Shown piece after piece: positions 1,692 through 18,952 of a DNA stretch of 54,072 bases. A program made the position numbers and the translations under genes. The notes under the pieces were generated by a model. That model was not told where the DNA came from. It saw only the letters and a list, made by a program, of their open reading frames with translations, and searched no databases. Position 1 is the first letter of the stretch; every line of letters starts with the position of its first letter. The DNA lies in NCBI GenBank assembly GCA_000708835.1, contig DF237523.1, forward strand, positions 4,252 through 58,323, written 5' to 3'. Source of the stretch: Klebsormidium nitens (lineage: Eukaryota > Plantae > Klebsormidiophyceae).

Positions 1692-4600
1692 TCAGTAGAC
1701 CACCGTTGGTGCATACTGCAAGGCAACAGGAGTGTCAGTGTTCTCAGTACTTTGCAGGTTTTACCAATGAACAAGGTGGCCCTTGATACCGCAAGTCCAT
1801 TACCCGCAACACAATCCTCGCGAAGCTTCTACCTTTGATGTGGCGTCTTTAAATGTGCTCGTTAAGACAACCAAACCCAAATCACACTAAGCTCCTTGGA
1901 AACTCAACATCCTGGCAGCGTCTGGGGTTTCTAGATGCAGATGCAAGTCTGCCGCCGGACAATTGGCAAATCATCAATGATGCAAAGACTCCAGCTTATG
2001 TGCGATAGCGCGCATCCAAGATTCCAAAACGGCTTCTTTCCGCATCGAAGAGTGCGTACCTCATCGTCCTCGTCGCTGAGGGATCCCCCTTCCGGCTCGC
2101 TGAGGCGCCACCCCAGGAACCCTTCCAACAGGCTCTGAAGCGAGTCTGCCTGCACAGCCGAAGGATGACTCCGTTTTATGAAAGTTATGGGAGTCTGACG
2201 TTTCCGTGTGTGGGTTCAAAGACGATGTAGAATAGTAAATAGTGACTCGCTTGTACATGCTCAAACGCCTCTGCCAAAGCGGCCAGACTCGAGAGAACCT
2301 GCTTAAAAGACAGTATGAATGAACCTCAAGGGACGGAAATGCAATATCCTTCGCGTTGAACGAACTCAAGCTCCTCTCCGAGCCTCCACCCACAGAGATG
2401 AGGCTGTTTTCTTATGGTGAATCAACAAGTCAAAGGGGATAGTGAAGCACACAACAACAACACTTATCGAGTTCAAAATCAACACTGGACTCTGGATAAT
2501 CTCCAAAGTTGCACTAGTATATGTCAGGGCTTATCAACTAAGGGGATGCGCTTCACCACCTTCGCTGAAGTGACCTCATACTGAACGGACGAGCACGTCA
2601 GCGCAGCAATGAAGAAGCTAGAGTTAAGTCATACCGAACGGACGAGCACGTCAAGCGCAGCAATGAAGACGTTAATGTGACGTCATACCGAACAGACGAG
2701 CACGTCAGTGCAGCAATGAAAATGCAACGAGACGCGCTCTGAGCCCCACCTGTTGTTTGAGCTCCCCGTCAATCGGCTGCGCTTCTCGCAAGGTGCTGAA
2801 GAACCCCTGCCAAACAGAAGCACAGAAACAATAAGGGCGGCTTCCGATCTACACAGGAGTACAAAAGTAGTGTCCGTCCCGCACGTTGAACGCAAGATGT
2901 ACTAACGCCAGCAAGGTGATCCTCTTCTCGACATCAACGTATGGTATGATTGAAAAGCTGCACTCTAAGTAACACTCCAAGACCAGCTTTTCAGAAACCT
3001 TGAACGGCGCATACAGCCTGCTGTGTAGAACTAATCTCTCTACTAAGGAAACATTCCAAATAACAATGCTAGGCGCGCAGGCCCAGATGAGCGGACCCTG
3101 TAGATTCATCTTGGTGTGCTACTATCAAACCCAACCCTGACGGTTAATACCTATTGGCTATCAGGGTGATCGGTTATCAGCAAGAGAAGTTGACAGAAAG
3201 ACGGAGACAAGTGCACAGGGCGCTCACCGCGAGGAGGTGCTGCAGAAAACTGTCCTTTTCAAGCCAGGCCTCGTCCAGCAGCGCGTCGCCCGCCCCGCGG
3301 TTTGACTCAGGCAGGAGGCCGTGCCGCAACTGCCAGTACAGGGCCCTCAGGAACTGCACGACAAGTTAGAGGTCAGGTAAACCAGTTGTACCGTAAGCGC
3401 TGAAGCGGAAACCAGCGTAGATGTAGGCCTTCGAAGACGTTGTTCACGAACAACGCCTTTTCGATGAGTAGCGGCCGGACAGCGGCAGGGATTTGTCACG
3501 CTAACGGCGCTGGGGTTGGAAATCTTCTGAATTTTGGCCTCCATTGACGGGAAATGGTTCGACGACGAGTTTGAATAGGTCCGTGGCGGTAAAAGCAAGG
3601 AAACCAACTGTATATTTCTTTCCCATAGCACCCGCACGTTTGTCTCAGCGTCAGCTCCGGTCATGACGCTTACTCGACTCCGTAACGCATGTTCTCGACA
3701 TGCTCCCGGGCAGGTTTTTCCAGAGCATACTGAAAGCCCGATCGCTTTTGACCAGGCAAAATAGAGCGTCTTTCAAAGTTTAGTGAGGGAGACCTGAAGT
3801 TCCCCTGATTGAACTCCTCTCTTTCCCTTGGGCACTCTTCTTGCCGTTTTGGAATCCCCAGCAAGTTTTGAGCTTGATTTGCCAGCACATATTATCAGAC
3901 CTCGCAAACCTCCAGTCTGGACTTTCCCTCAAAACCACTTACACGTCAAGCTTACCTGCACGAACAGTCGGGTGCGTGTGCGGAGAGGCTGCATAACAAG
4001 GAGTCGGCATGACGTCAGCCTCTCGAGGCGTGTGGACGCCAAGTTGCAAGGAAACGACATCACCGAATTTTGTTGTCGTGTATTCTTACTTCGATAGCGA
4101 CCGAAGCTTTGACGGCAGTTGCATCCAGGACCTGCCGGCTTAACTAACAGCTCGAATAGCAAGAAGAAAGTGAAACCGGACTTCCAAAATGATCATATAT
4201 CGACGAGAGTGCCACCTGGAGCTCTACTCTGCGGACGCCCTAGAGTGCATTTCCGTGTGTTCGTCGTGCGACACAAGCGGAGGCCCACTACGCAAACCGG
4301 GTCTTAATATTCTTGTCGTGTGAATTTTTTAAGTGCTCCGACTTGGACAAGAAGTTAATAAAGGGTAATGCAAAGCGGCCACGCTTTGGATGCTGTCGTT
4401 CGCCGTTGTGCCCCGTGTCTCATGATCTTGTTCACAAGGGATATGACAACAACGAAGAGGGCCAACAGTGGAGCGACGTCCTCACCGCTTCGACGCAGCC
4501 CAGCATGAGGGGCAGGATGGCCTTCCACTGAGAGAACGACTCGAGGGACTGGCCCATCTGCGGCAGAACAAGCGAGAATCTCAACGTGACAGCACGGCTG

Positions 4601-7600
4601 CCTTCAACTTACCGCCTTAAGCTTTTTTTGAGGTTGTGTCTTGCATTCGACATCAGATGACAGCGCCTCGATCAGTGTTGGATATCTGCTTCTTCTTGGG
4701 TTGGAAAAGCGCGAGGATTGATAACACTCCGAACATTACGTTTTCCATCAGATTTCTGTGAATCAATCGGTATCAGAGAGAAAGTGTACGCTTCCTTCTC
4801 GGTGGAAAAAAGCCCGAACGTCGATCATTCCAAGTTATCCTCTGTGCAGACTCCGGCAGTTTGCCTACTGCGAATGCGCAGCGACTGCCGCTTCGACATG
4901 GAAAGCGCTTGTTATGTTTCGACGAAATGCGACAGGAAATCCATGTGGAGGCTCTGGGCAACCCACCACGAATGCGATGAAGGCGAACTGCAGTTCGCCC
5001 AGCAGGAGCTCCTCCCGTCCCTTGTACTGCTTCGACAGAACCGTCTCCAGCAAGCCGCTCTGCACAGAGCAACGTCCAAGCGAGTGAGACAGTAATAGCT
5101 CTCTGGCATCCATGTTCTTTTCACTAACACGACTTTCTGCTTTGGTGGTATGAGTCGCCCTTTCGAGGATCTCTGCATCTGTTATGATAGAAATTGGCGC
5201 TCTCCATACGCGTTTGAGAGTTCTGTTTTCTTGATCCCAAGCCTTGAAAGAGTCACAAAGGGGGTTTAGCCTCCGCCCAAGCCTTGGCGGACGTAGCAGT
5301 ACAACGCACAGCATACACTAAAGAGACCCAGCATGCCCACCATAATCATTGATCGATCCTAGAAGGATGCTATCAACATTGCGGCCTCTTATACAACGAG
5401 ACAAACATTCAAAAGTACCTGCTACAACAATGCACCGAAATAGCATGCCCGCATTGTTCTCAACACCAGTCCCCGATTAAGTGTAAAACTGCGCTCCAGC
5501 CCTAGCATCAGACCTGCCGCGCCCGGCCACTCTGAGCCATGCGCGTTACCTGCCACTGCGAATCAGGAGCAATAGCCTACACGTAAAAGCTTGGACAGTA
5601 TATTCAGGAGGTGTTGGGAACGGCTTGAGGGAGAAACTATCGACGACTTCGAAAACATTTCGCAAAGCGTATGCATCTGAGCGAATCCTCACCTTATCTA
5701 AGTTAAGAGCCGTCAGCTCCGTCGCGCTCATCCCCTTCCGTTTCACCAGCCGGGGCAGGTCCGTGTAAAAGCAGCGGCCGCTTCTCCCTCGGGGCTTTTC
5801 CCCCGAGCTGCTGGGCCCGGCCTCTCCTCCTGCCTCCCTAAGCCCCGAGGATTCCCCCGAGCGATTCTCGCCGACTGACGTCTTCCCGTTGCTCGAATCT
5901 GACGTTCTTCCTGATGCCAGCCTGCTGCTATTTGAAGGACTTGCTATGGAGTCTAGCGGAGCCATCGGTGGATGGGAAATGCCCCTCAGCCCGGCGAAGT
6001 CGTGCCGCTCTAGTTGCTCGCTTGCCACCCCCCTCACATGAGCTCCCTTCGGCCCTGCAACAGACCCGTCTACTGTCTCCACGCCAGAAGGCGCTCCTTC
6101 TTGTGTATCTACGTCCATATCTTCGGCACCGTTCCCTTTCCGCCGGAGTTCCGCTGTGCTGCCGCCTTTCCTCATTTCTTTCCGCTGGTACATGAGCGCA
6201 ATCTGGTCCACTCGGCTCAGCCCCGAACCCTGTCCCTCTGCCGCCGACTCCTCCAAAACTAAGCCCCCTGACATCGCATCCCTTCCCAAACTTTCGGCAG
6301 CCGCCTCCTGGTCTTCCCCCCGGTCCATGATGATGACGCCCTGAGTGACGTCAGCCAGCAGCTTCTCCCCACTCTGCGGACCCGCCCCATCGACGCTCTC
6401 TCTCGTATCTTTAGAAGGACCTCCACTTTGAGCGCGCTCTCGCCCCCGGTCAATCTGCTCCTGAAGAACCCTCTCCGCCCCCGTCTTCGGCCGCGTCTCG
6501 CTGACGTCAGCCTCACACACCACGCAGATGTCGCCCCCAACAGGCTCTGCAGCAGTGGATCATAGAAACGTTATTTTTGCACTCTGCAGCCTTGGCTTCG
6601 GTAAATTCCGACAACCACAATTCAAATCTTGAACACTCAAATCTGACGTTTCCAATTTCTGCAGTTGGAATCGGGACAAAACTTCAAACACTCAATGGCT
6701 GTTTATTTCTTTGGTAAATAAACAGCTGATTGATTCACATCTCTTGAGTCCCCAGCGGTCTTACCTCCAGTTTGACGTCCTTGCAAACAGTCATTGTGTG
6801 CGCGAACAGAAGGTATCGGGCGCTTATCCTGGATAAGACTGGCGCCATGTGACAGAAGATACTACTACATTGGCAAATAAGAAGGTCGACCTCCACCGCC
6901 TTTGGCCTGTGATGAGCAACTGATAGTACTCGAAGAATACTCAAGCAACCGCTTAGTCTTCCGCTCAGAGGGCTCCCAGTCTCACCGTGTGCCTGCACCA
7001 CCTCGTCGGTAATGAAGTTGCTCAGAGTCTGCCAGGCCGCGTACTTGTGCAGGTCATAAGCGCCAAGCTCTGCATCAAATTGGAATGTCCTGACGCCCCC
7101 AGCTAACCGATCCACCTGCAGAAGGTCGATGCACAACTTCACGGTTTCTGCAAGCATAAGAACTTCTTACACCTTGCTACATCTTCTAGTTCAGTATTTT
7201 TAATGGAGAGTCGTGCTTACACAACTGAACGAAAAGTTGCTTCTTCCACTTGACATTCCTTATCTGATGACTCCGAACGCCTGTTTCTAAGCCGATCTCC
7301 AACTTGGATCTTTAGAAATCCACAAAGGTGAACCCAGATGCATTTGAAAGGAAGTGTAAAATTTGAATCGACAGAAAAGCTTAGGTCTGTATATCTCACC
7401 TGGTCTTCGTCAGTCAGCGCTGCCAAGCGCTCCTCGGGCGCATCCCACTGGCGCACGACCACCTACAAGAGGCCACAAGAGTCCAAATCACACAAGGTCC
7501 TCAGTTAAGGGGCACCTTCTACATGCCAGATATTACCAGTCTGACTATCTGACAACAGTATGAGAGAAGAAGTTAACAATGTGTCATGTCATCAGACCTC

Positions 7601-12602: not shown

Positions 12603-14284
12603 ATGGAAGCGAGTTTATTCGGCTGAGGACGGTTGGCCAGCGGCTCATTCTCCTTCCAAATTCACGTGCATACTGCGATGCAAGGTGGAGGGAAATGGGT
12701 TTGCGCAATGACAGTGGCCGGGGTCAGCCGGTTGGAGCCAGGCGCCGCGGCTGCTCAATCTTCCGGTCGAGCCCTTCATACGGTCTTTGTGACCCCATTA
12801 TATCCGTGCCTGAGCATTAGTACGTTATCTGGCTGGACCTGTACGTCATTGTGCTGCCAAGATTCGATGATCATTAAGAAGCTTTTCTACTATATTGCAC
12901 GTACTATGGTCTGACATGTACGACTCGGCACGCATGTGACGTCAGTCTAGCTAACTAGTACCTACATGTGCAGTCGTGCCGTTCATGCAATATTAGAATG
13001 ACTGCCCGCATACTATAAAGCCGCCGCGTGGCAGCTGGCAGGGTCGGAACTGCTCAGTCTCGATGATATTGTACTCGAGCCTGCCATGCAGCCGCAGCAC
13101 ATATAGGGCCGCGCTTTTGTATATCTCGTCAGATCATCAACGGAAATCATTAGGTTCGCATATCGTGAACCCTGCATGCAATTCCGGCGGCCCCGCTGGC
13201 CGGGCTATCCGGTCTAATATTCCTAAGCCTGGAAACCAGGTCCCCAACTTCGACTTGCCGTGCCCTGAGTCTGGCAAATGAACTATAGAGGGCGTCATCA
13301 TGGCATCCACTAGTGCACCCTATCTCCAGATCGCAACCCGTCCCCATCAGTGCATGCGGGTCACGGTCCTCATGCATGCACCTGATTATACCACCACCTT
13401 CCGACAAGTTTTACGAGCGTGCAGTACGCGCGGGTGAATGAGCTTGCCCGGCCTTGATCTGCAACTTTGTTGCCACCGGCCAATTGCATTTGACAAAATA
13501 TCATCCAAACATGCGCAAGATCTGATACGCGTACGGTGCCTGAGCTACGATCGCACGCAAATTGATCAGCCATGCTGATTTCGACCGTTGATAAAGGGCA
13601 ACGTACAATCTGTGCGGCCCCCGCGCAGCTGCCTTGCCTGGCCGTCAGCACTTTTTAATACGCCGATCCGTCATGATCAATGCAATCGGATTCTGTTTGA
13701 ACTCTGCCACTTGCTCTCTCGACTCTGGTTTAGGCAGACCTTAGTACTACGGCTAACGCCCATGCATCGAAGCTCGGCAGCAGGACCGATGCACGAAGGT
13801 TGATTGCTGACGTGCAGCCTCATGATGATGTTGTGTGCTTGCCCCGTGCCAATTCGACTCTTTTCGAGACTGACGAGACTCTAAATCAGCCAAGAAATCA
13901 GAGCTGGCAGGAGAATTTTGGCACGGGTTGGCTGGAAGAATCACATGTGCCACGCGAAAGGGGCTATACGAGCTTTCATGATTCTTGCCGCGTACTACAG
14001 GTAGCTCCTGCAAGCCGAACCAAGCCGAACCGAAAGTTTCAAGTCCTCGTGACAAGTTGCAGATGCAGCCGTGGTTAGAAAGCGGCGATTGAGGACCTTA
14101 TAGTAGTGACTTCTTCGTGGCGTCTGGTGAAGTTTCAACAGCTGGACTTGAGCATCGGGTAAAGTGAGAAGGAGGAGTGCGCTTTGGGGGCACAAAAAGA
14201 GTGCTCGTACGAGCTCACTTTTGTTTACATCTGTGCGGGCAGCTCATCAGCTCTCAAGCTCTTGATTCAGACGCTGCTGACAGA

Positions 14285-17200
14285 ATGGCGACCGCTTTGA
14301 AGACGACGCTTCTCGTCCTCCTCACACTATGCGCTCTGGTGAGGTCATGTTTCTCTGCGGACCGTTTGCATTGATCAAGAATGAGGAGCTTTTGGTTAGG
14401 TTCCTTTTTCTGCCTCCTTAACAAGGAACTTCTGATTAGGTCCCCTTTTCTGCCTCCTTAGAGAGCTTCTGGGTCTGAAAAGGATTCTTCATTTTAACAT
14501 CGAGATTCTAGGTGCCCAGTGTCTCTACGGGTAGTGCATGCAGTGCATGGCAGACAATACCCGAACGCGGCCCTTCCATTCCTGCTTGGGTTTGATACCC
14601 GTGCAAGTTCCAAAGACTCTATCAATAGTTCCTACCATCATAGTTGACCCCGAAGTGCTGGCATGGATTGTTCAAATCGACGGTCGTTCTCTCCGCATTG
14701 TGCGAAGTCATCGGTATCCTTCCAGACTCGTTAATATGCAGTTCAGTAGCTAAGAATGCATGCTCATCCAGAATCGGTTTTCATGTCCAGAGCGTGTTGC
14801 ATCATGTTCTTCGCCATCGAGGTCTTAAGAAGCTTGGCTGTCTTTTTGGCTTGCCAGATTCAAAGCTCGCAAACTCCGCAAACGGGAAAGTGTGGATCGT
14901 CATGTTTTCTTTTCGTTGATACAGATAATAAGCCTCCTGAGCGACTAACACTAAGATTCCAGTTGCGTCTTCTCCATTACTCTTGAAGAAGTCGCCCTTT
15001 GTTGCTCTTTGTCAACAACCTCTGTTTCACCGGTTCCAGAAATGTATCTGAAGCCGCCAGTCTTAGAGATACAGGCGATCGAAACCCGCTCATGTCTCCT
15101 AAAGGTCGCCGCTCAAGCTCTCCCGAGGAAAACTCTCCACCGAGAGAAGGACCTCGAAGTCGGGAAAGCGAGCGCCGAAATTCTGTCCAGCTACGGAGGC
15201 CCCTGCCCAGATGGTCGTGCGGCGGACTTCTTGCCCTTGATGGATCCTCTCAGTGAGCAAATCTGATCTCTGCGAACCGTTTCCATTCCATCCGTCGGCC
15301 TTCAGTGTTTCGATCTTCTTGAAGCTTTCTGAACTTACGCTCAGATCGGTCGTGAGTTTGTTACCCGTACCCTCAATCTCGACTCGCAGGTCTTCGGGGT
15401 ATGGACCGCAGCTTGTAGGGATGCTTTGACCCGTCATCGATGAACTAGCTAAGCTCGATAACCAAAGAGGACTGCAACAGTGAAGATTTGCGGAAATTAC
15501 TTCAACTTTGTTCTGTTTCCAACATCTGTTTTCTGTCAGGAGTTCGGTCATTCAGAGCTGCTTCTTACCTTGTGCGAAGGTTCAGGGTTACTCCGGCTTC
15601 AAAACGCCCTCTTATGTCCTCATTATGACCGTCCGTTTCTCTAGTCTTATGCCGAAAATGAATCCGACGATGTTCTGAAATCGACCGCTCCTACATGTTG
15701 GCCGCAGTAAGGAAACACTTCAACTGCTAACACGTTGAGGTGTGCCGGTAACCTGGAACGGCGTCGCTCAACGAATGGCTCGATCTTTCTTCGCCTCCAT
15801 TTTAAACTTGAGACTCAAGCTCAACCAGGGAAAGCGATCAAGCCTTGGATACCAAATCAGTTCTGTGATCTCCTCGTAATAATTTGAATGCCTTTTCCGC
15901 AGGGCTGCTGATCGCCGTTTCTTAGAAGCTGCCCGGCTGAAAACGTCAACGCATTACGGCTCCTCCTCAAGCAAAAAGTCAATGGACGCCGTGAATCCAC
16001 ATCATGCAGAAAATTAACGAAACGTTAGTCATTGAACTCGTCAGCTTCTTCGCAGAGCGGCCTCCGTTCCTCTAACCGCGTACCCTTCTGAAGCTTCTCT
16101 GTCCGCCACCCCCCCGCACTTCACGAAAAATTCTCCATTTAAGACAATCGCACCCCTGCCTTCGTTGATGCGCTCCAGTCTTTTCTTCTTAACACTCTCG
16201 CTCTCTTTTCGCAGCTCTCCCTTACCGACCGCCTCGACGGGGCCGCGACGTGCCCCCCCCCGGTACCCCCCCGGTGCCCCCCGGGCCACACCGCGTGCTT
16301 CCTCGCCGACCGGTCCGCGCACTTCTGCTGCAAGCGACCGGGCACATGCCCTTGCCACCCCCCCGAAACGTTAGCCGACGCGGGCTGCATCGTCAAGCCC
16401 GGGGAACCGGTTCGCAGCCCCGAGGGGCCGTCTCTGCTGTACGTCTGGGCGGGCCCTAGGGAGTGGAAAGGAAATGACTTTCTAGCGGTCTTTGAGTTAG
16501 ACCCCCGGAACGAGAACTACGGGAAGCTGCTGTGCGTGAGCGAGATAGACACGTCGGGAAATGAGGCGCATCACATGGGGTTATCGGCGGACCGGAAAAC
16601 GCTGATCGTGGGGGGGCTGTTTAGCATGATAAAGAAGCAGCCCGACGTCTACTTCTTCAACGTATCGGCGAACGCCACGTGTCCGCCGTACGTTGGTTCC
16701 CTGGACGTGCCAGACGCCTCGGCCGCTGATGATTGGAAGCCGCTCCCCGAGGGGGGGTTCGTGGGCACTATGATGGGCTCCGCTAACGGGTCGACCCCCG
16801 GGGGGGTGGTGAAGTTTTCGGGGGGGACGCCGGATAGTTACGAGGGAGTCTTCCCGCAGCGGGGGGGACAGTTCGTGGGCGCGGAAGAATGAACCCCCAC
16901 GGAATCGACATTAGGCCGGAAGCGGATCTGATGGTGACAACCGACTACATGGAACCGGCGTCTGCGCTCGTGCTGGGACCGACCGGGGGGATCCCCCGAG
17001 GGCGAACCACTGTGCGCATGTGGAAGCTTTCGACGATGGAGATCACGCAGACGATCAACGTGACGAAAGTGACCGGGAGGACGCACCGCGGCAACTACAC
17101 CGGCTTCATGGACGTGAAGTTCATCCCGGGGGATCCCTCTGGGCGGTCCTTCGCGAACGGGGGCGGCGTGATCTACCTCATCGACCCGGTAGCCGGGACG

Positions 17201-17887
17201 GCGGAACCGACCTACGTCTTCGCTTCGCCTGAAGTGGTACGTCTGGCTCGCTTGGCACATTCCTCGGAATTTTGCACTCTATTGAGCCAGAATGAAGGGT
17301 CATCGTGGCTGGATGGCCTAACCTGAAGGAAATGAGTTTTGCAGCAATCGATCGGAATTAATGGTAGCCGAATGGGAGCCGAGTAGTAGTTCAGACTACT
17401 GGGCTTGGAATGAACAAACTTCGCAACTTATGCGCTTACTATATAAGGTGAGCCAGGAATGGGCCCACAAACATAGAACAAACATCGAGTTGCCAACGCG
17501 CTTTTGCAGGGTCCGTGCGTTCTGGCGATAAGCGCGGACGGAACGCGCCTCTGGGGCACGCTCAACACGTGGGGCCAGGTCTACATGTTCGACGCGAGCC
17601 GCCCAGAAAAGCTCGCCGTTCTAGATGTCCTCGAGCTGGGCCCGTTCTCTGGGCCACATTTCATGCTGCTGCTAGAGCCCAAAGAAGATCGTATCGTCGT
17701 CGCAAATTACTTCATTCAAATGCCGCCGGACATGGGGGTGATCGCCCCGCCTGCGGATTACAAGGTTAGGGTCGCTAACCTGACCGAGAACGGGACGCGC
17801 ATGGTGCTGGACGAAGGGTTCGACGTGGACTTCGATAACCTGCCGGGGGTGCCGCCGTCTAACCCGCATGGGTTAGCGTACTTGTAA
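14285..17887 (+). CDS. Secreted SBP56/methanethiol-oxidase-like beta-propeller protein with Cys-rich N-terminal module; 3 exons, ~484 aa if the 1-nt frameshift near 16861-16889 is corrected
   Basis: Exons 14285-14338 (MATALKTTLLVLLTLCAL, phase 0), 16215-17236 and 17510-17887. Motifs LLYVWAG..DFLAV.ELDP...YGK, GNEAHHMG, MNPHGI, DVKFIPG, GPHF, NPHG. Exon 2 is 1022 nt, one short of a codon multiple. Confidence 0.8.
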
Positions 17888-18952
17888 GTAGGTGCCAGAG
17901 TGCTAACATCAGTGAGTCAGGTTTTGGTGCCGTAAGGTCATGCAGGATAAAGGTCGGTAACAAGCGAAGCGCTGCCGCCGCGCGTTTGAGTGTACCTTTG
18001 AAAGACTCAGCGGGAGGTCATCGACCTTGTCAAGCTAAGATGCTGTAGTACAGCGCTAGATTCATCATCTGCAGGACGGTGGGCTTCGGTTAGTCTCACA
18101 TTTCTAGCCTAGCAGGGCGGGTCTTGGCTTTCGAGCTCTAAGACGTAGTTATGAAAGCTTGCACTGTGAGCGCGTACGTGGGCGCCCCTGCATGGCAGGT
18201 CGGCCGATGGGCCGCCCGGCAGCCATAATATGTTTGTGATCGATATATATCAATCAACGAGGCATCATGTGAATAGCGCGCAATTAGGTTTCTAGGTTCA
18301 CTGTATATGCTGACTCCCGGCTTCAAGGCTTGTGCACTTTGCACAGAAGTGATGCATATGACTCTGCGAGGATCGACGGGCCGCACTGCGGCAGCCTGAG
18401 AGTCGCGGCATCTTGTAGTCCTGCCAAGTTGGCGAACCTCGGAAAGGGTTGTTCCCAGATGCCGGCGAGCGCTCAAGTGTGCGCCGGGCAGCAGTAGAAC
18501 ACAACACGTGCATCCGCAATTCCAGGGCTGCTGCAAGATCCGCCACGCAAACTCATGAATTTTCATATGCAGAGAGATAGTGCATGCATCACGCATATGG
18601 ATTTGAGATGTTTTGCCGCTATCCCGGTCGGAGTCCAACTTGCATGGGCCGCGCCAGCCAGTGTGACAAATCACGTGTGCGGACAAGACCTGCCGCCGTG
18701 CTTGATCGAGGTCCCGCGATTAACTTGCCATGGTTTGACGGCCCGGGTTACTACTTGAGAACGTCATGGAATGTTGTCAAGGACTATACTCGTCGAAACA
18801 ACTTGCTCCTGTTGAAACAGGTGCTCTCAATCTAATATCCAAATCAATGTACCTTGAAACTACGACTCCATGACCGTGACACCCAGCAATAGCCGAGCCA
18901 GGGAAGTGACCAAGGACCTGCGCACATTGATAGACTATCGTCTTGCATCTAG

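What the first reader, a model, noticed from the sequence alone, without database searches (positions are those of the whole stretch)
14285..17887. Secreted SBP56/methanethiol-oxidase-like metalloenzyme of fungal/bacterial type in a green alga
Seen: a signal peptide, seven N-glycosylation sequons (NVS, NAT, NGS, NVT, NYT, NLT, NGT) and conserved His motifs GNEAHH, NPHG, GPHF and a C-terminal NPHG. It has only two introns and long GC-rich exons, unlike its 4-13-exon neighbours. Established: SELENBP1/SBP56 and bacterial MtoX are methanethiol oxidases, and plant SBP56 proteins are cytosolic. The YVWAG..DFLAV and GNE(P/A)HH pattern resembles, from memory, the uncharacterised secreted fungal/bacterial SBP56-like clade. 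Inference: a horizontally acquired or anciently retained extracellular metal-dependent oxidase, possibly for volatile sulfur or microbial interaction at the cell surface.
Basis: partly seen in the sequence, partly recalled or inferred. Interest (0 to 1): 0.75.

Follow-up and report, generated by a model that had tools for sequence, protein, structure and literature searches.

The report
Secreted divergent SBP56-like propeller gene
[quoted passage not shown] The reference sequence breaks its reading frame, one exon was missed, and its evolutionary origin is unresolved.

Summary
The motifs, seven sequons, signal-peptide-like first exon and GC-rich exons are all present. The window is Klebsormidium nitens scaffold DF237523.

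- Exon 2 is not one open frame. One base is missing at 16888/16889 relative to a related Klebsormidium contig, so a TGA follows at 16890-16892. The public annotation splits the gene into 243-aa and 227-aa models.
- A conserved 148-nt block (15105-15252), with AG/GT borders and dN/dS 0.22, is probably a missed exon.

The relative's four-exon gene is intact, and dN/dS is 0.06-0.25 on both sides of the break. The gene is therefore functional in the genus. The reference lesions are either 454/Newbler errors or very recent.

The protein belongs to a divergent SBP56-related subfamily, not to canonical SELENBP1 or MtoX. A bacterial member folds as a seven-bladed propeller closest to 2ECE.
- Kept: HH and the C-terminal His.
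- Lost: HxxH, both putative TTQ tryptophans and the C-terminal Cys.

Relatives are soil bacteria plus scattered eukaryotes (Chlamydomonadales, Spirogloea, early fungi, Physarum, a rotifer, a gnat). Klebsormidium's placement is unresolved, and a single green-lineage origin is rejected.

An earlier scan note reports another distant SBP-like gene elsewhere in this genome.

The parts
14285..14338 (+). Exon 1: start codon plus 18 codons of a hydrophobic signal-peptide-like sequence, with a phase 0 donor (GTGAGG at 14339).
   Evidence: It is conserved in L001 1766-1819 (MRTALKAGLLVLLTLSAL, donor GTAAGT).
15105..15252 (+). Candidate unannotated exon '1b' of 148 nt (VAAQALPRK...LMDPL), flanked by an AG acceptor and a GT donor.
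   Evidence: It is 85% identical to L001 2535-2682, with no indels. dN/dS is 0.22 only in the frame that continues exon 1, and 12 of 21 differences are at third positions. It has no Rfam or Pfam match.
16215..17236 (+). Exon 2: a Cys/Pro-rich N-terminal stretch (about 16215-16430) followed by propeller blades 1-4 and part of blade 5. It is interrupted by a frame break in the reference.
   Evidence: The L001 counterpart 3630-4651 is one open frame of 340 codons.
16224..16224 (+). One base (A) present in K. nitens and absent in the relative (CCCTTACCG against CCCTT-CCG). It puts exon 2a in frame with exon 1 only if exon 1b is skipped.
16888..16892 (+). Frame break: one base is missing relative to the relative, giving an in-frame TGA at 16890-16892. 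This is where the public model KFL_005740030 ends.
16557..16574 (+). GNEAHH, the His-His pair equivalent to human SELENBP1 H73/H74 and MtoX H89/H90.
16892..16903 (+). NPHG, the subfamily-specific His at the start of the inner strand of blade 3.
17237..17509 (+). Intron (GT...AG, phase 0), also used by the second public gene model.
   Evidence: It is 72% identical to L001, against about 90% for the exons.
17510..17887 (+). Exon 3: blades 5-7, with GPC (17510), GPH (17651), the C-terminal NPHG (17861) and stop TAA 17885-17887.

Best explanation
**What the gene is.** The locus is one nuclear gene of Klebsormidium nitens, published as two fragments: KFL_005740030 and the next model. Its most likely structure is four exons: 14285-14338, 15105-15252, 16215-17236 and 17510-17887.

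**What it encodes (inferred).** The product has these parts:
- a signal peptide;
- a short linker;
- a low-confidence Cys/Pro-rich stretch;
- a seven-bladed beta-propeller of a divergent SBP56-related subfamily.

**How it probably works (inferred).** I infer that the protein is exported and N-glycosylated, and that it binds a metal at the hub of the propeller. Copper is the leading guess, by analogy with SELENBP1 and MtoX. One conserved residue sits at the start of the inner strand of each blade: H-H, D-D, H, D, C, H, H. The protein most likely acts on a small extracellular substrate. It is not a canonical methanethiol oxidase, because several residues needed in those enzymes are missing.

**State of the gene.** It is intact and under purifying selection in the genus. 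In the reference assembly the frame is broken, either by 454/Newbler single-base errors or by very recent mutation.

**Origin.** The subfamily is common in soil bacteria and patchy in eukaryotes. Lateral transfer has happened somewhere in its history. The donor of the Klebsormidium copy, bacterial or eukaryotic, is not resolved.
For: **Identity and context**
- There is a 100% match to K. nitens KFL_005740030.
- The neighbours are AAR2, AMPK-beta, NmrA-like and L35 genes, which is a nuclear context.
- A syntenic relative, L001, is 86% identical.

**Selection**
- dN/dS is 0.25, 0.145, 0.055 and 0.235 for the four coding segments. The segments after the break are included.
- Exon 1b has dN/dS 0.22.
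- The L001 four-exon model is in frame throughout.

**Family**
- Pfam SBP56 scores 25-30 bits on the algal pieces and 62-71 bits over the whole profile for bacterial relatives.
- The AF2 model of relative P0004 has pLDDT 90.9.
- Its best structural match is 2ECE: Foldseek E 5.8e-21, VIA Z 43.8, rmsd 2.4 A over 364 residues. That is 10 Z units above the next propeller.
- The algal exon-2 model has pLDDT about 85 in the propeller part.

**Hub**
- The invariant residues H81, H82, D133, H184, D244, Q295, H342 and H407 each lie at the start of a strand, spaced one blade apart.
- The alga keeps all of them except Q295, which is Cys.

**Export**
- Bacterial and all named eukaryotic members have hydrophobic N-termini.
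- The alga has seven sequons. Bacterial members average 0.9.

**Assembly**
- The reference was assembled from 454 plus Illumina reads with Newbler.
Against: - No SignalP run, metal analysis or enzyme assay was possible.
It was not measured.
- The joined full-length algal protein was never searched or folded.
- The algal pieces alone stay below Pfam's SBP56 cut-off.
- The reference carries two single-base differences about 660 nt apart, neither in a long homopolymer. That is more than expected from random assembly error, so real decay in strain NIES-2285 is possible.
- A His/Asp cluster conserved in bacteria (E362, D363, H369, E371, D373, H374 of P0004) is lost in the alga. Its chemistry may therefore differ from that of the bacterial proteins.
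- No transcript evidence was seen for exon 1b.
Confidence: 0.6

Rival explanations
1. It is a true copper-dependent methanethiol or alkyl-thiol oxidase working like SELENBP1 or MtoX, only exported.
For: - The fold is the same as SBP56.
- The HH pair and the C-terminal His are kept. These are three of the four 'strictly conserved' MtoX histidines.
- Human E252 is kept as an acid, the Asp in MDVK.
- MtoX is also exported.
- UniRef auto-names the Chlamydomonadales relatives 'Methanethiol oxidase'. That is a label, not a test.
- Four of about 55 bacterial loci have CusB-like or HMBD neighbours.
Against: - HxxH (human H137/H140, MtoX H140), which is needed for copper binding and activity, is deleted.
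- Human D189 and H329 are not kept.
- Both putative TTQ tryptophans are replaced or deleted. These are 2ECE W207 and W405.
- The C-terminal Cys is absent, because the protein ends earlier.
- The MtoX equivalog model scores 28-82 bits against a cut-off of 650.
- None of 103 neighbouring ORFs is SCO1 or MauG.
Confidence: 0.15
2. In the sequenced strain the gene is a recent pseudogene. The extra base at 16224 and the missing base at 16888/9 are real mutations, and no full-length protein is made.
For: - There is a premature TGA at 16890-16892.
- Under the four-exon model there are two frame disruptions in about 660 nt, neither in a long homopolymer.
- The public annotation could only produce two fragments.
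Against: - dN/dS after the break is 0.055-0.235, so any inactivation must be very recent.
- The assembly is 454/Newbler. The break could be an undercalled A run (GAAGAATG).
- An earlier scan note (s1-326924, unchecked here) reports another conserved gene with a one-base frameshift in this reference.
Confidence: 0.3
3. Origin rival A: the gene entered the Klebsormidium lineage directly from a soil bacterium (Acidobacteriota- or Burkholderiales-like). It then gained a signal-peptide exon, a linker and introns.
For: - The highest identities are all bacterial or metagenomic, at 42-46%. Named eukaryotic homologues reach 29-37%.
- 248 GTDB species carry it, mostly soil Acidobacteriota.
- In a bacteria-only tree the alga attaches beside Burkholderiaceae L038 and the 'NEAHH' subgroup, with support 99.
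- The AU test does not reject nesting there (p 0.54) or a clade with the bacterial group (p 0.40).
- One uninterrupted 1-kb exon covers most of the domain. None of the 7-9 Chlamydomonadales introns is shared.
- Long motifs are near-identical to bacterial ones, for example MDVKFIPGDPSGRSF and YLIDPVAGTAEP.
Against: - With eukaryotic homologues included, the soil-bacterial clade is monophyletic without Klebsormidium (support 98 and 94). The alga then sits in a polytomy, or weakly (87) with Dimargaris, Hyaloraphidium, MMETSP1392 and Chlamydomonadales.
- The blade-5 Cys and a hydrophobic C-terminus are shared with chlorophyte homologues, not with bacteria.
- High identity to bacteria may only reflect their slow evolution.
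Confidence: 0.4
4. Origin rival B: the Klebsormidium gene shares a eukaryotic ancestor with the secreted homologues of Chlamydomonadales and early-diverging fungi. That ancestor could be an old eukaryotic acquisition followed by many losses, or the result of eukaryote-to-eukaryote transfer.
For: - The LG+G4 tree groups it (87) with Dimargaris plus the MMETSP1392, Hyaloraphidium and Chlamydomonadales group.
- The hub pattern H H D D H D C H...H is shared with Astrephomene, C. reinhardtii and MMETSP1392.
- The bacterial His/Asp loop is degenerate in all eukaryotic members.
- All have signal-like N-termini and more sequons.
Against: - Support is weak, and the C20 tree gives a polytomy.
- One clade of Viridiplantae sequences is rejected (p 8e-6).
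- One clade of all named eukaryotes is rejected (p 3e-6). Unnamed metagenome rows may confound that second test.
- No introns are shared.
- Identity to these homologues is only 33-36%.
Confidence: 0.35
5. It is a non-catalytic extracellular binding or wall protein that merely keeps the propeller scaffold.
For: - It has a Pro/Cys-rich N-terminal extension (PPPVPP, 8 Cys) that is absent from bacterial relatives and predicted with low confidence.
- The bacterial His/Asp loop is lost.
- The Spirogloea homologue has lost every hub His, so non-catalytic members do exist.
Against: - The alga keeps all hub positions except Q to C.
- Purifying selection is strongest (0.055) in the segment that carries NPHG and MDVK.
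Confidence: 0.12

Closest known systems
Bacterial 'selenium-binding protein SBP56-related protein' of soil Acidobacteriota, Burkholderiales and others (uncharacterised, 400-450 aa, exported)
   Same: 37-46% identity over the propeller. Shared motifs are YVWAG, DFLAV, NE[AP]HH, DD, NPHG, MDVK.IPGDP, GPH and PHG at the C-terminus. Both have an N-terminal export signal.
   Different: The alga adds a spliced signal-peptide exon, a linker exon and a Cys/Pro-rich stretch. It has Cys where the bacteria have the invariant Gln295. It lacks the conserved NED...H.EGDH.VHV loop and carries seven sequons.
Sulfolobus tokodaii ST0059 (PDB 2ECE) and canonical SBP56 / SELENBP1 (Pfam PF05694)
   Same: The seven-bladed propeller fold (Z 43.8 for the bacterial relative). 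The HH pair, the acid in blade 4 and the C-terminal His are kept.
   Different: Only 15-18% identity. HxxH, D189, H329, the two conserved Trp and the C-terminal Cys-containing tail are absent. Canonical proteins are cytosolic and have no signal peptide.
MtoX, the periplasmic Cu-dependent methanethiol oxidase of Hyphomicrobium and Ruegeria
   Same: Both are exported SBP56-family propellers. H89/H90 and H412 equivalents are present.
   Different: The NCBIfam equivalog score is far below cut-off. H140 and the putative TTQ tryptophans are missing. Bacterial relatives have no SCO1/mauG operon. Instead they often sit next to Trans_reg_C+TPR regulators or ECF sigma factors.
Chlamydomonadales secreted SBP56-like multigene family (e.g. 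CHLRE_13g585050v5; Astrephomene Agub_g1891-1893)
   Same: The same hub pattern including the blade-5 Cys, a signal-like N-terminus, many sequons and a hydrophobic C-terminus after PHG.
   Different: 33-36% identity. They have 7-9 introns, none at the Klebsormidium positions, and no Cys/Pro-rich extension. The tree link is weak.

Membership tests
Pfam SBP56 (PF05694) | Profile score at or above the gathering cut-off (34 bits) | tested here: inconclusive
   Algal pieces score 25.2 bits (window exon 2a), 29.6 bits (L001 exon 2) and nothing for exon 2b or exon 3 alone. Bacterial relatives at 40% identity score 62-71 bits over profile positions 20-440. The joined algal protein was not scanned, because the joined step was left out.
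Pfam SBP56 (PF05694) | Seven-bladed beta-propeller closest to the solved SBP56 structure 2ECE | tested here: met
   The model of relative P0004 (pLDDT 90.9) matches 2ECE with Foldseek E 5.8e-21 and VIA Z 43.8, rmsd 2.4 A over 364 residues. The next hit has Z 33.2. This was tested on the relative. The partial algal model is consistent with it.
Methanethiol oxidase MtoX (NCBIfam NF052453 equivalog) | Equivalog score of at least 650 bits | tested here: not met
   Algal pieces score 28-33 bits and full-length bacterial relatives 52-82 bits.
Cu-dependent MTO (SELENBP1 / MtoX) | His-His pair (human H73/H74; MtoX H89/H90) | tested here: met
   GNEAHH at 16557-16574. It is aligned.
Cu-dependent MTO (SELENBP1 / MtoX) | HxxH motif (human H137/H140; MtoX H140), needed for Cu binding and activity | tested here: not met
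   The motif falls in a five-residue deletion. The subfamily has TDDF and the alga ADDW.
Cu-dependent MTO (SELENBP1 / MtoX) | C-terminal His (MtoX H412; 2ECE H449) | tested here: met
   NPHG at 17861-17872 aligns with canonical AR(A/P)H.
Cu-dependent MTO (SELENBP1 / MtoX) | Acidic residues D189 and E252 and His329 of human SELENBP1 | tested here: inconclusive
   E252 is replaced by Asp (MDVK), so the acid is kept. D189 aligns next to the new His of NPHG and is not kept. H329 aligns to Thr, Ala or Trp and is not kept. These positions rest on a distant sequence alignment.
MtoX-type enzymes | Two conserved Trp proposed to form TTQ (2ECE W207, W405), plus mauG and SCO1 next to the gene | tested here: not met
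   W207 is replaced by Phe in the bacteria and Tyr in the alga. W405 lies in a nine-residue deletion. None of 103 flanking ORFs in about 55 bacterial loci is MauG or SCO1.
SELENBP1 / RdMTO | Conserved Cys near the C-terminus (human C466, RdMTO C448) | tested here: not met
   The subfamily ends a few residues after PHG, so the GGDCSSD tail is absent.
Secreted eukaryotic protein | Cleavable N-terminal signal peptide | not testable with these tools
   The sequence has one Lys followed by 12-13 hydrophobic residues. With exon 1b it is followed by VAAQA. All named homologues start the same way. No SignalP run was possible.

The most novel reading that the evidence does not exclude
The NE[AP]HH-DD-NPHG-D-(Q/C)-GPH-PHG proteins are a distinct, uncharacterised class of exported hub-metal propeller enzymes whose chemistry differs from methanethiol oxidation. 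The class has moved repeatedly between soil bacteria and soil or terrestrial eukaryotes: Klebsormidium, Chlamydomonadales, zoopagomycete and chytrid fungi, Physarum, bdelloid rotifers and a fungus gnat. The eukaryotic algal branch swapped the hub Gln for a Cys.
Probability: 0.3. Interest if true: 0.6.

Novelty: new variant of a known kind. Interest (0 to 1): 0.4.

Why it matters
**Annotation.** The result corrects a public annotation. Two fragment models, KFL_005740030 and its neighbour, are one gene with a probable extra exon. It also flags single-base indels in the K. nitens reference that can hide conserved genes.

**Family.** It defines a side branch of the SBP56 family with a remodelled hub. 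Databases label members of this branch 'methanethiol oxidase' or 'selenium-binding protein 1' without support.

**Distribution.** The patchy spread across soil bacteria and unrelated soil eukaryotes makes it a candidate for repeated gene transfer. If the hub binds copper and turns over an extracellular small molecule, this would be a new exported redox activity at the surface of an early land-adapted alga.

Tried and rejected
- **RNA or snoRNA in the conserved intronic block.** Rfam found nothing at E up to 1 over 14000-18200. The minus-strand ORF 15099-15551 has dN/dS above 1.
- **Pfam on exon 1b and on the Cys/Pro-rich stretch.** No family at E up to 5.
- **A short intron as the cause of the frame break.** Only about 55 nt lie between the stop in the downstream frame and the TGA, and the relative is colinear with one extra base.
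- **Contamination.** Rejected on spliceosomal introns, synteny in two assemblies and eukaryotic neighbours.
- **Contig for P0003.** Not on record.
- **Rooting with canonical SBP56 from plasmids and Gemmatirosa.** The alga was pulled to the base, with long-branch warnings.
- **AU test under the C20 mixture on 76 rows.** It did not finish in three tries and was replaced by LG+G4 on 42 rows.
- **Shared introns with Chlamydomonadales.** None found.
- **Literature.** No paper names this gene or links Klebsormidium, HGT and selenium-binding proteins.
- **Joined spliced protein.** All searches were exon by exon, by reference.
Full report
**Organism and locus**

The 225-codon first part of exon 2 is 100% identical to 'hypothetical protein KFL_005740030 [Klebsormidium nitens]', 243 aa. 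That model lies on scaffold DF237523.1. Its neighbours are AAR2, an AMPK-beta subunit, an NmrA-like gene and ribosomal protein L35, which is a normal nuclear neighbourhood. A Logan contig from run SRR23617307 (L001) is syntenic. It is 86% identical over the gene, and I treat it as a related Klebsormidium.

**Checking the observation**

- The start codon at 14285, the hydrophobic 18-codon exon 1, and the GT donor at 14339.
- The acceptor before 16215 and the intron 17237-17509.
- The stop at 17885-17887.
- The seven sequons and all the named motifs.
- The exons are the most GC-rich stretch of the window: GC 0.61-0.66 and GC3 0.76-0.83, against 0.47-0.49 in the introns.
- Ten of the window's 27 G or C runs of six or more bases lie in this gene.

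Two things were missed.

First, exon 2 is not one open frame. Frame 0 ends at TGA 16890-16892, and NPHG onwards is in another frame. The relative reads GAGGATATGAAC where the window reads GAAGA-ATGAAC, so one base is missing in the reference. The public annotation reflects this. KFL_005740030 stops at that TGA. A second 227-aa model covers window 16931-17887 and uses the same last intron.

Second, inside 'intron 1' there is a 148-nt block at 15105-15252.
- It is 85% identical between the two algae, against about 70% for surrounding intron.
- It has an AG before it and a GT after it in both species.
- It has no stop in the frame that continues exon 1.
- dN/dS is 0.22 in that frame only, and 12 of 21 differences are at third codon positions.

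In L001, exon 1 (54 nt), this exon (148 nt), exon 2 from 3630 and exon 3 are in frame throughout. In K. nitens an extra A at 16224 puts the first 660 nt of exon 2 in frame with exon 1 only if the 148-nt exon is skipped. The block matches no Rfam or Pfam family.

**Is the gene alive?**

dN/dS between window and L001, by segment:

| Segment | dN/dS |
|---|---|
| Cys/Pro-rich part | 0.25 |
| Rest of exon 2 before the break | 0.145 |
| Exon 2 after the break | 0.055 |
| Exon 3 | 0.235 |

Selection has therefore acted on the whole protein for nearly all of the divergence between the two lineages. The reference genome was built from Roche 454 and Illumina GAIIx reads with Newbler (PMC4052687). That method is prone to single-base indels. 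The break could be an undercalled run of A. An earlier scan note (s1-326924, not checked here) reports another conserved gene with a one-base frameshift in this reference. I put an assembly error at roughly 55% and real, recent lesions at roughly 30%.

**What the protein is**

Family and fold:
- Algal pieces give weak SBP56 matches: Pfam 25-30 bits against a cut-off of 34, the NCBIfam MtoX equivalog 28-33 bits against 650, and PDB 2ECE at E 0.014.
- A word search with the uninterrupted exon 2 of L001 found 807 proteins. The best 120 are bacterial or metagenomic, 400-450 aa, 37-43% identical, all with PF05694. NCBI names them 'selenium-binding protein SBP56-related protein'.
- In GTDB genomes, 248 species carry one, mostly soil Acidobacteriota, plus Burkholderiales, Steroidobacteraceae, Isosphaeraceae and others.
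- Full-length bacterial members pass Pfam SBP56 (62-71 bits) but not the MtoX equivalog (52-82 bits).
- An AlphaFold model of P0004, built with 77 homologues, has pLDDT 90.9. It is a seven-bladed propeller whose best match by far is 2ECE: Foldseek E 5.8e-21, VIA Z 43.8, rmsd 2.4 A over 364 residues, with the next hit at Z 33.
- The algal exon 2 alone models at pLDDT about 85 in the propeller. Its first 66 residues, the Cys/Pro-rich part, have low confidence.

Hub residues:
- In the 77-sequence alignment the invariant or near-invariant polar residues are H81, H82, D133, H184, D244, Q295, H342 and H407.
- Each lies at the start of a strand, and they are spaced one blade apart.
- I read these as the inner strands lining the central channel.

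Compared with the characterised enzymes:

| Feature | State in this subfamily |
|---|---|
| HH pair | kept |
| C-terminal His | kept |
| Human E252 | conservatively replaced by Asp |
| HxxH motif (human H137/H140, MtoX H140) | deleted |
| Human D189 and H329 | not kept |
| Two Trp proposed for a TTQ cofactor (2ECE W207, W405) | replaced or deleted |
| C-terminal Cys-containing tail | absent |

Bacterial neighbours include Trans_reg_C+TPR regulators (13 of about 55 loci), ECF sigma factors (8-10) and CusB-like or HMBD proteins (4). SCO1 and MauG never appear.

The alga keeps the subfamily hub except that Gln295 is Cys. It has lost a His/Asp-rich loop that the bacteria conserve. This is an SBP56-fold protein with a remodelled, probably metal-binding hub. 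Methanethiol oxidase activity is possible but not supported.

**Export**

Exon 1 encodes one Lys followed by a hydrophobic core. With exon 1b it is followed by VAAQA. Bacterial and all named eukaryotic homologues begin the same way. The alga has seven sequons, against a mean of 0.9 in 77 bacterial members. SignalP was not available.

**Origin**

The exhaustive search of 1.84 billion representatives found 433 relatives. Outside Klebsormidium, none is closer than 43% identity.

Cluster names show that the subfamily also occurs in these eukaryotes:
- Chlamydomonadales, as a multigene family in C. reinhardtii, C. incerta, C. schloesseri, Edaphochlamys and Astrephomene.
- Spirogloea muscicola.
- The fungi Dimargaris xerosporica (intronless, between eukaryotic genes) and Hyaloraphidium curvatum.
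- Physarum, the choanoflagellate Mylnosiga, the rotifer Adineta steineri and the fungus gnat Bradysia coprophila.
- An MMETSP protist.

The trees do not settle the alga's place:

| Data set and test | Result |
|---|---|
| Bacteria only | attaches beside a Burkholderiaceae sequence and the 'NEAHH' subgroup (99) |
| Distant outgroups added | falls to the base, with long-branch warnings |
| AU test of the nested position | allowed (p 0.54) |
| Eukaryotes added | soil-bacterial clade is monophyletic without it (98 and 94) |
| Eukaryotes added | alga sits in a polytomy, or weakly (87) with Dimargaris and the Chlamydomonadales-containing clade |
| AU test: clade with the bacterial group | not rejected (p 0.40) |
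| AU test: clade with Spirogloea | borderline (p 0.073) |
| AU test: one clade of Viridiplantae | rejected (p 8e-6) |
| AU test: one clade of all named eukaryotes | rejected (p 3e-6); unnamed metagenome rows may confound this |

Other evidence points both ways. None of the 7-9 Chlamydomonadales introns is shared with Klebsormidium. The blade-5 Cys and the hydrophobic C-terminus are shared. I conclude that lateral transfer occurred in this family's history, and that neither a bacterial nor a eukaryotic donor for Klebsormidium can be preferred with confidence.

**Limits**

- All analyses were exon by exon, by reference.
- No coordinates of the models were available.
- No transcript data were available.
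- An earlier scan note (s1-270367) reports a second, distant SBP-like gene elsewhere in the K. nitens genome. I could not retrieve it for comparison.

**Verdict**

This is a real gene of an uncharacterised variant of a known family. Its public model is wrong in two places and its origin is unresolved. It is of moderate interest.

Noticed in passing
window 15105-15252: An unannotated conserved coding block, the candidate exon 1b, lies inside the annotated first intron. It is absent from the public K. nitens model.
   Followed up: yes
window 16931-17887: The public annotation carries a separate 227-aa gene model here with no Pfam hit. It is simply the C-terminal part of the same SBP56-like gene, split off by the frame break.
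   Followed up: yes
window 16215-17887: Ten of the window's 27 G or C homopolymer runs of six or more bases lie in this 1.7-kb gene. The cause is heavy use of GGG (Gly) and CCC (Pro) codons. The runs are conserved in the relative.
   Followed up: partly
P0170 (Spirogloea muscicola SM000035S13058): This 949-aa protein has two tandem propellers of this subfamily. Every hub His is replaced (HH to TS, NPHG to APKG, GPH to SPN, PHG to PRG), so it is probably non-catalytic.
   Followed up: partly
P0171, P0290-P0302 (Chlamydomonadales): A multigene family of this divergent subfamily exists in Chlamydomonas, Edaphochlamys and Astrephomene, including three tandem genes Agub_g1891-1893. UniRef auto-names it 'Methanethiol oxidase' although it lacks the HxxH motif.
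   Followed up: partly
L002 5973-7823; L004 5942-7807 and 11460-17281: In two unrelated Acidobacteria-like contigs the homologue sits next to a Trans_reg_C+TPR regulator. In L004 a nosZ-nosL-ABC cluster lies 2 kb downstream. Across about 55 loci, ECF sigma factors and CusB/HMBD genes also recur.
   Followed up: partly
L092 2001-3326: The homologue in the fungus Dimargaris xerosporica is intronless and lies between LTV and PDCD2-like genes. It looks like another candidate transfer.
   Followed up: no
P0211, P0165: Homologues occur in the fungus gnat Bradysia coprophila and the bdelloid rotifer Adineta steineri. The rotifer copy is fused behind a long N-terminal region. They group with Physarum and unnamed metagenome sequences.
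   Followed up: no
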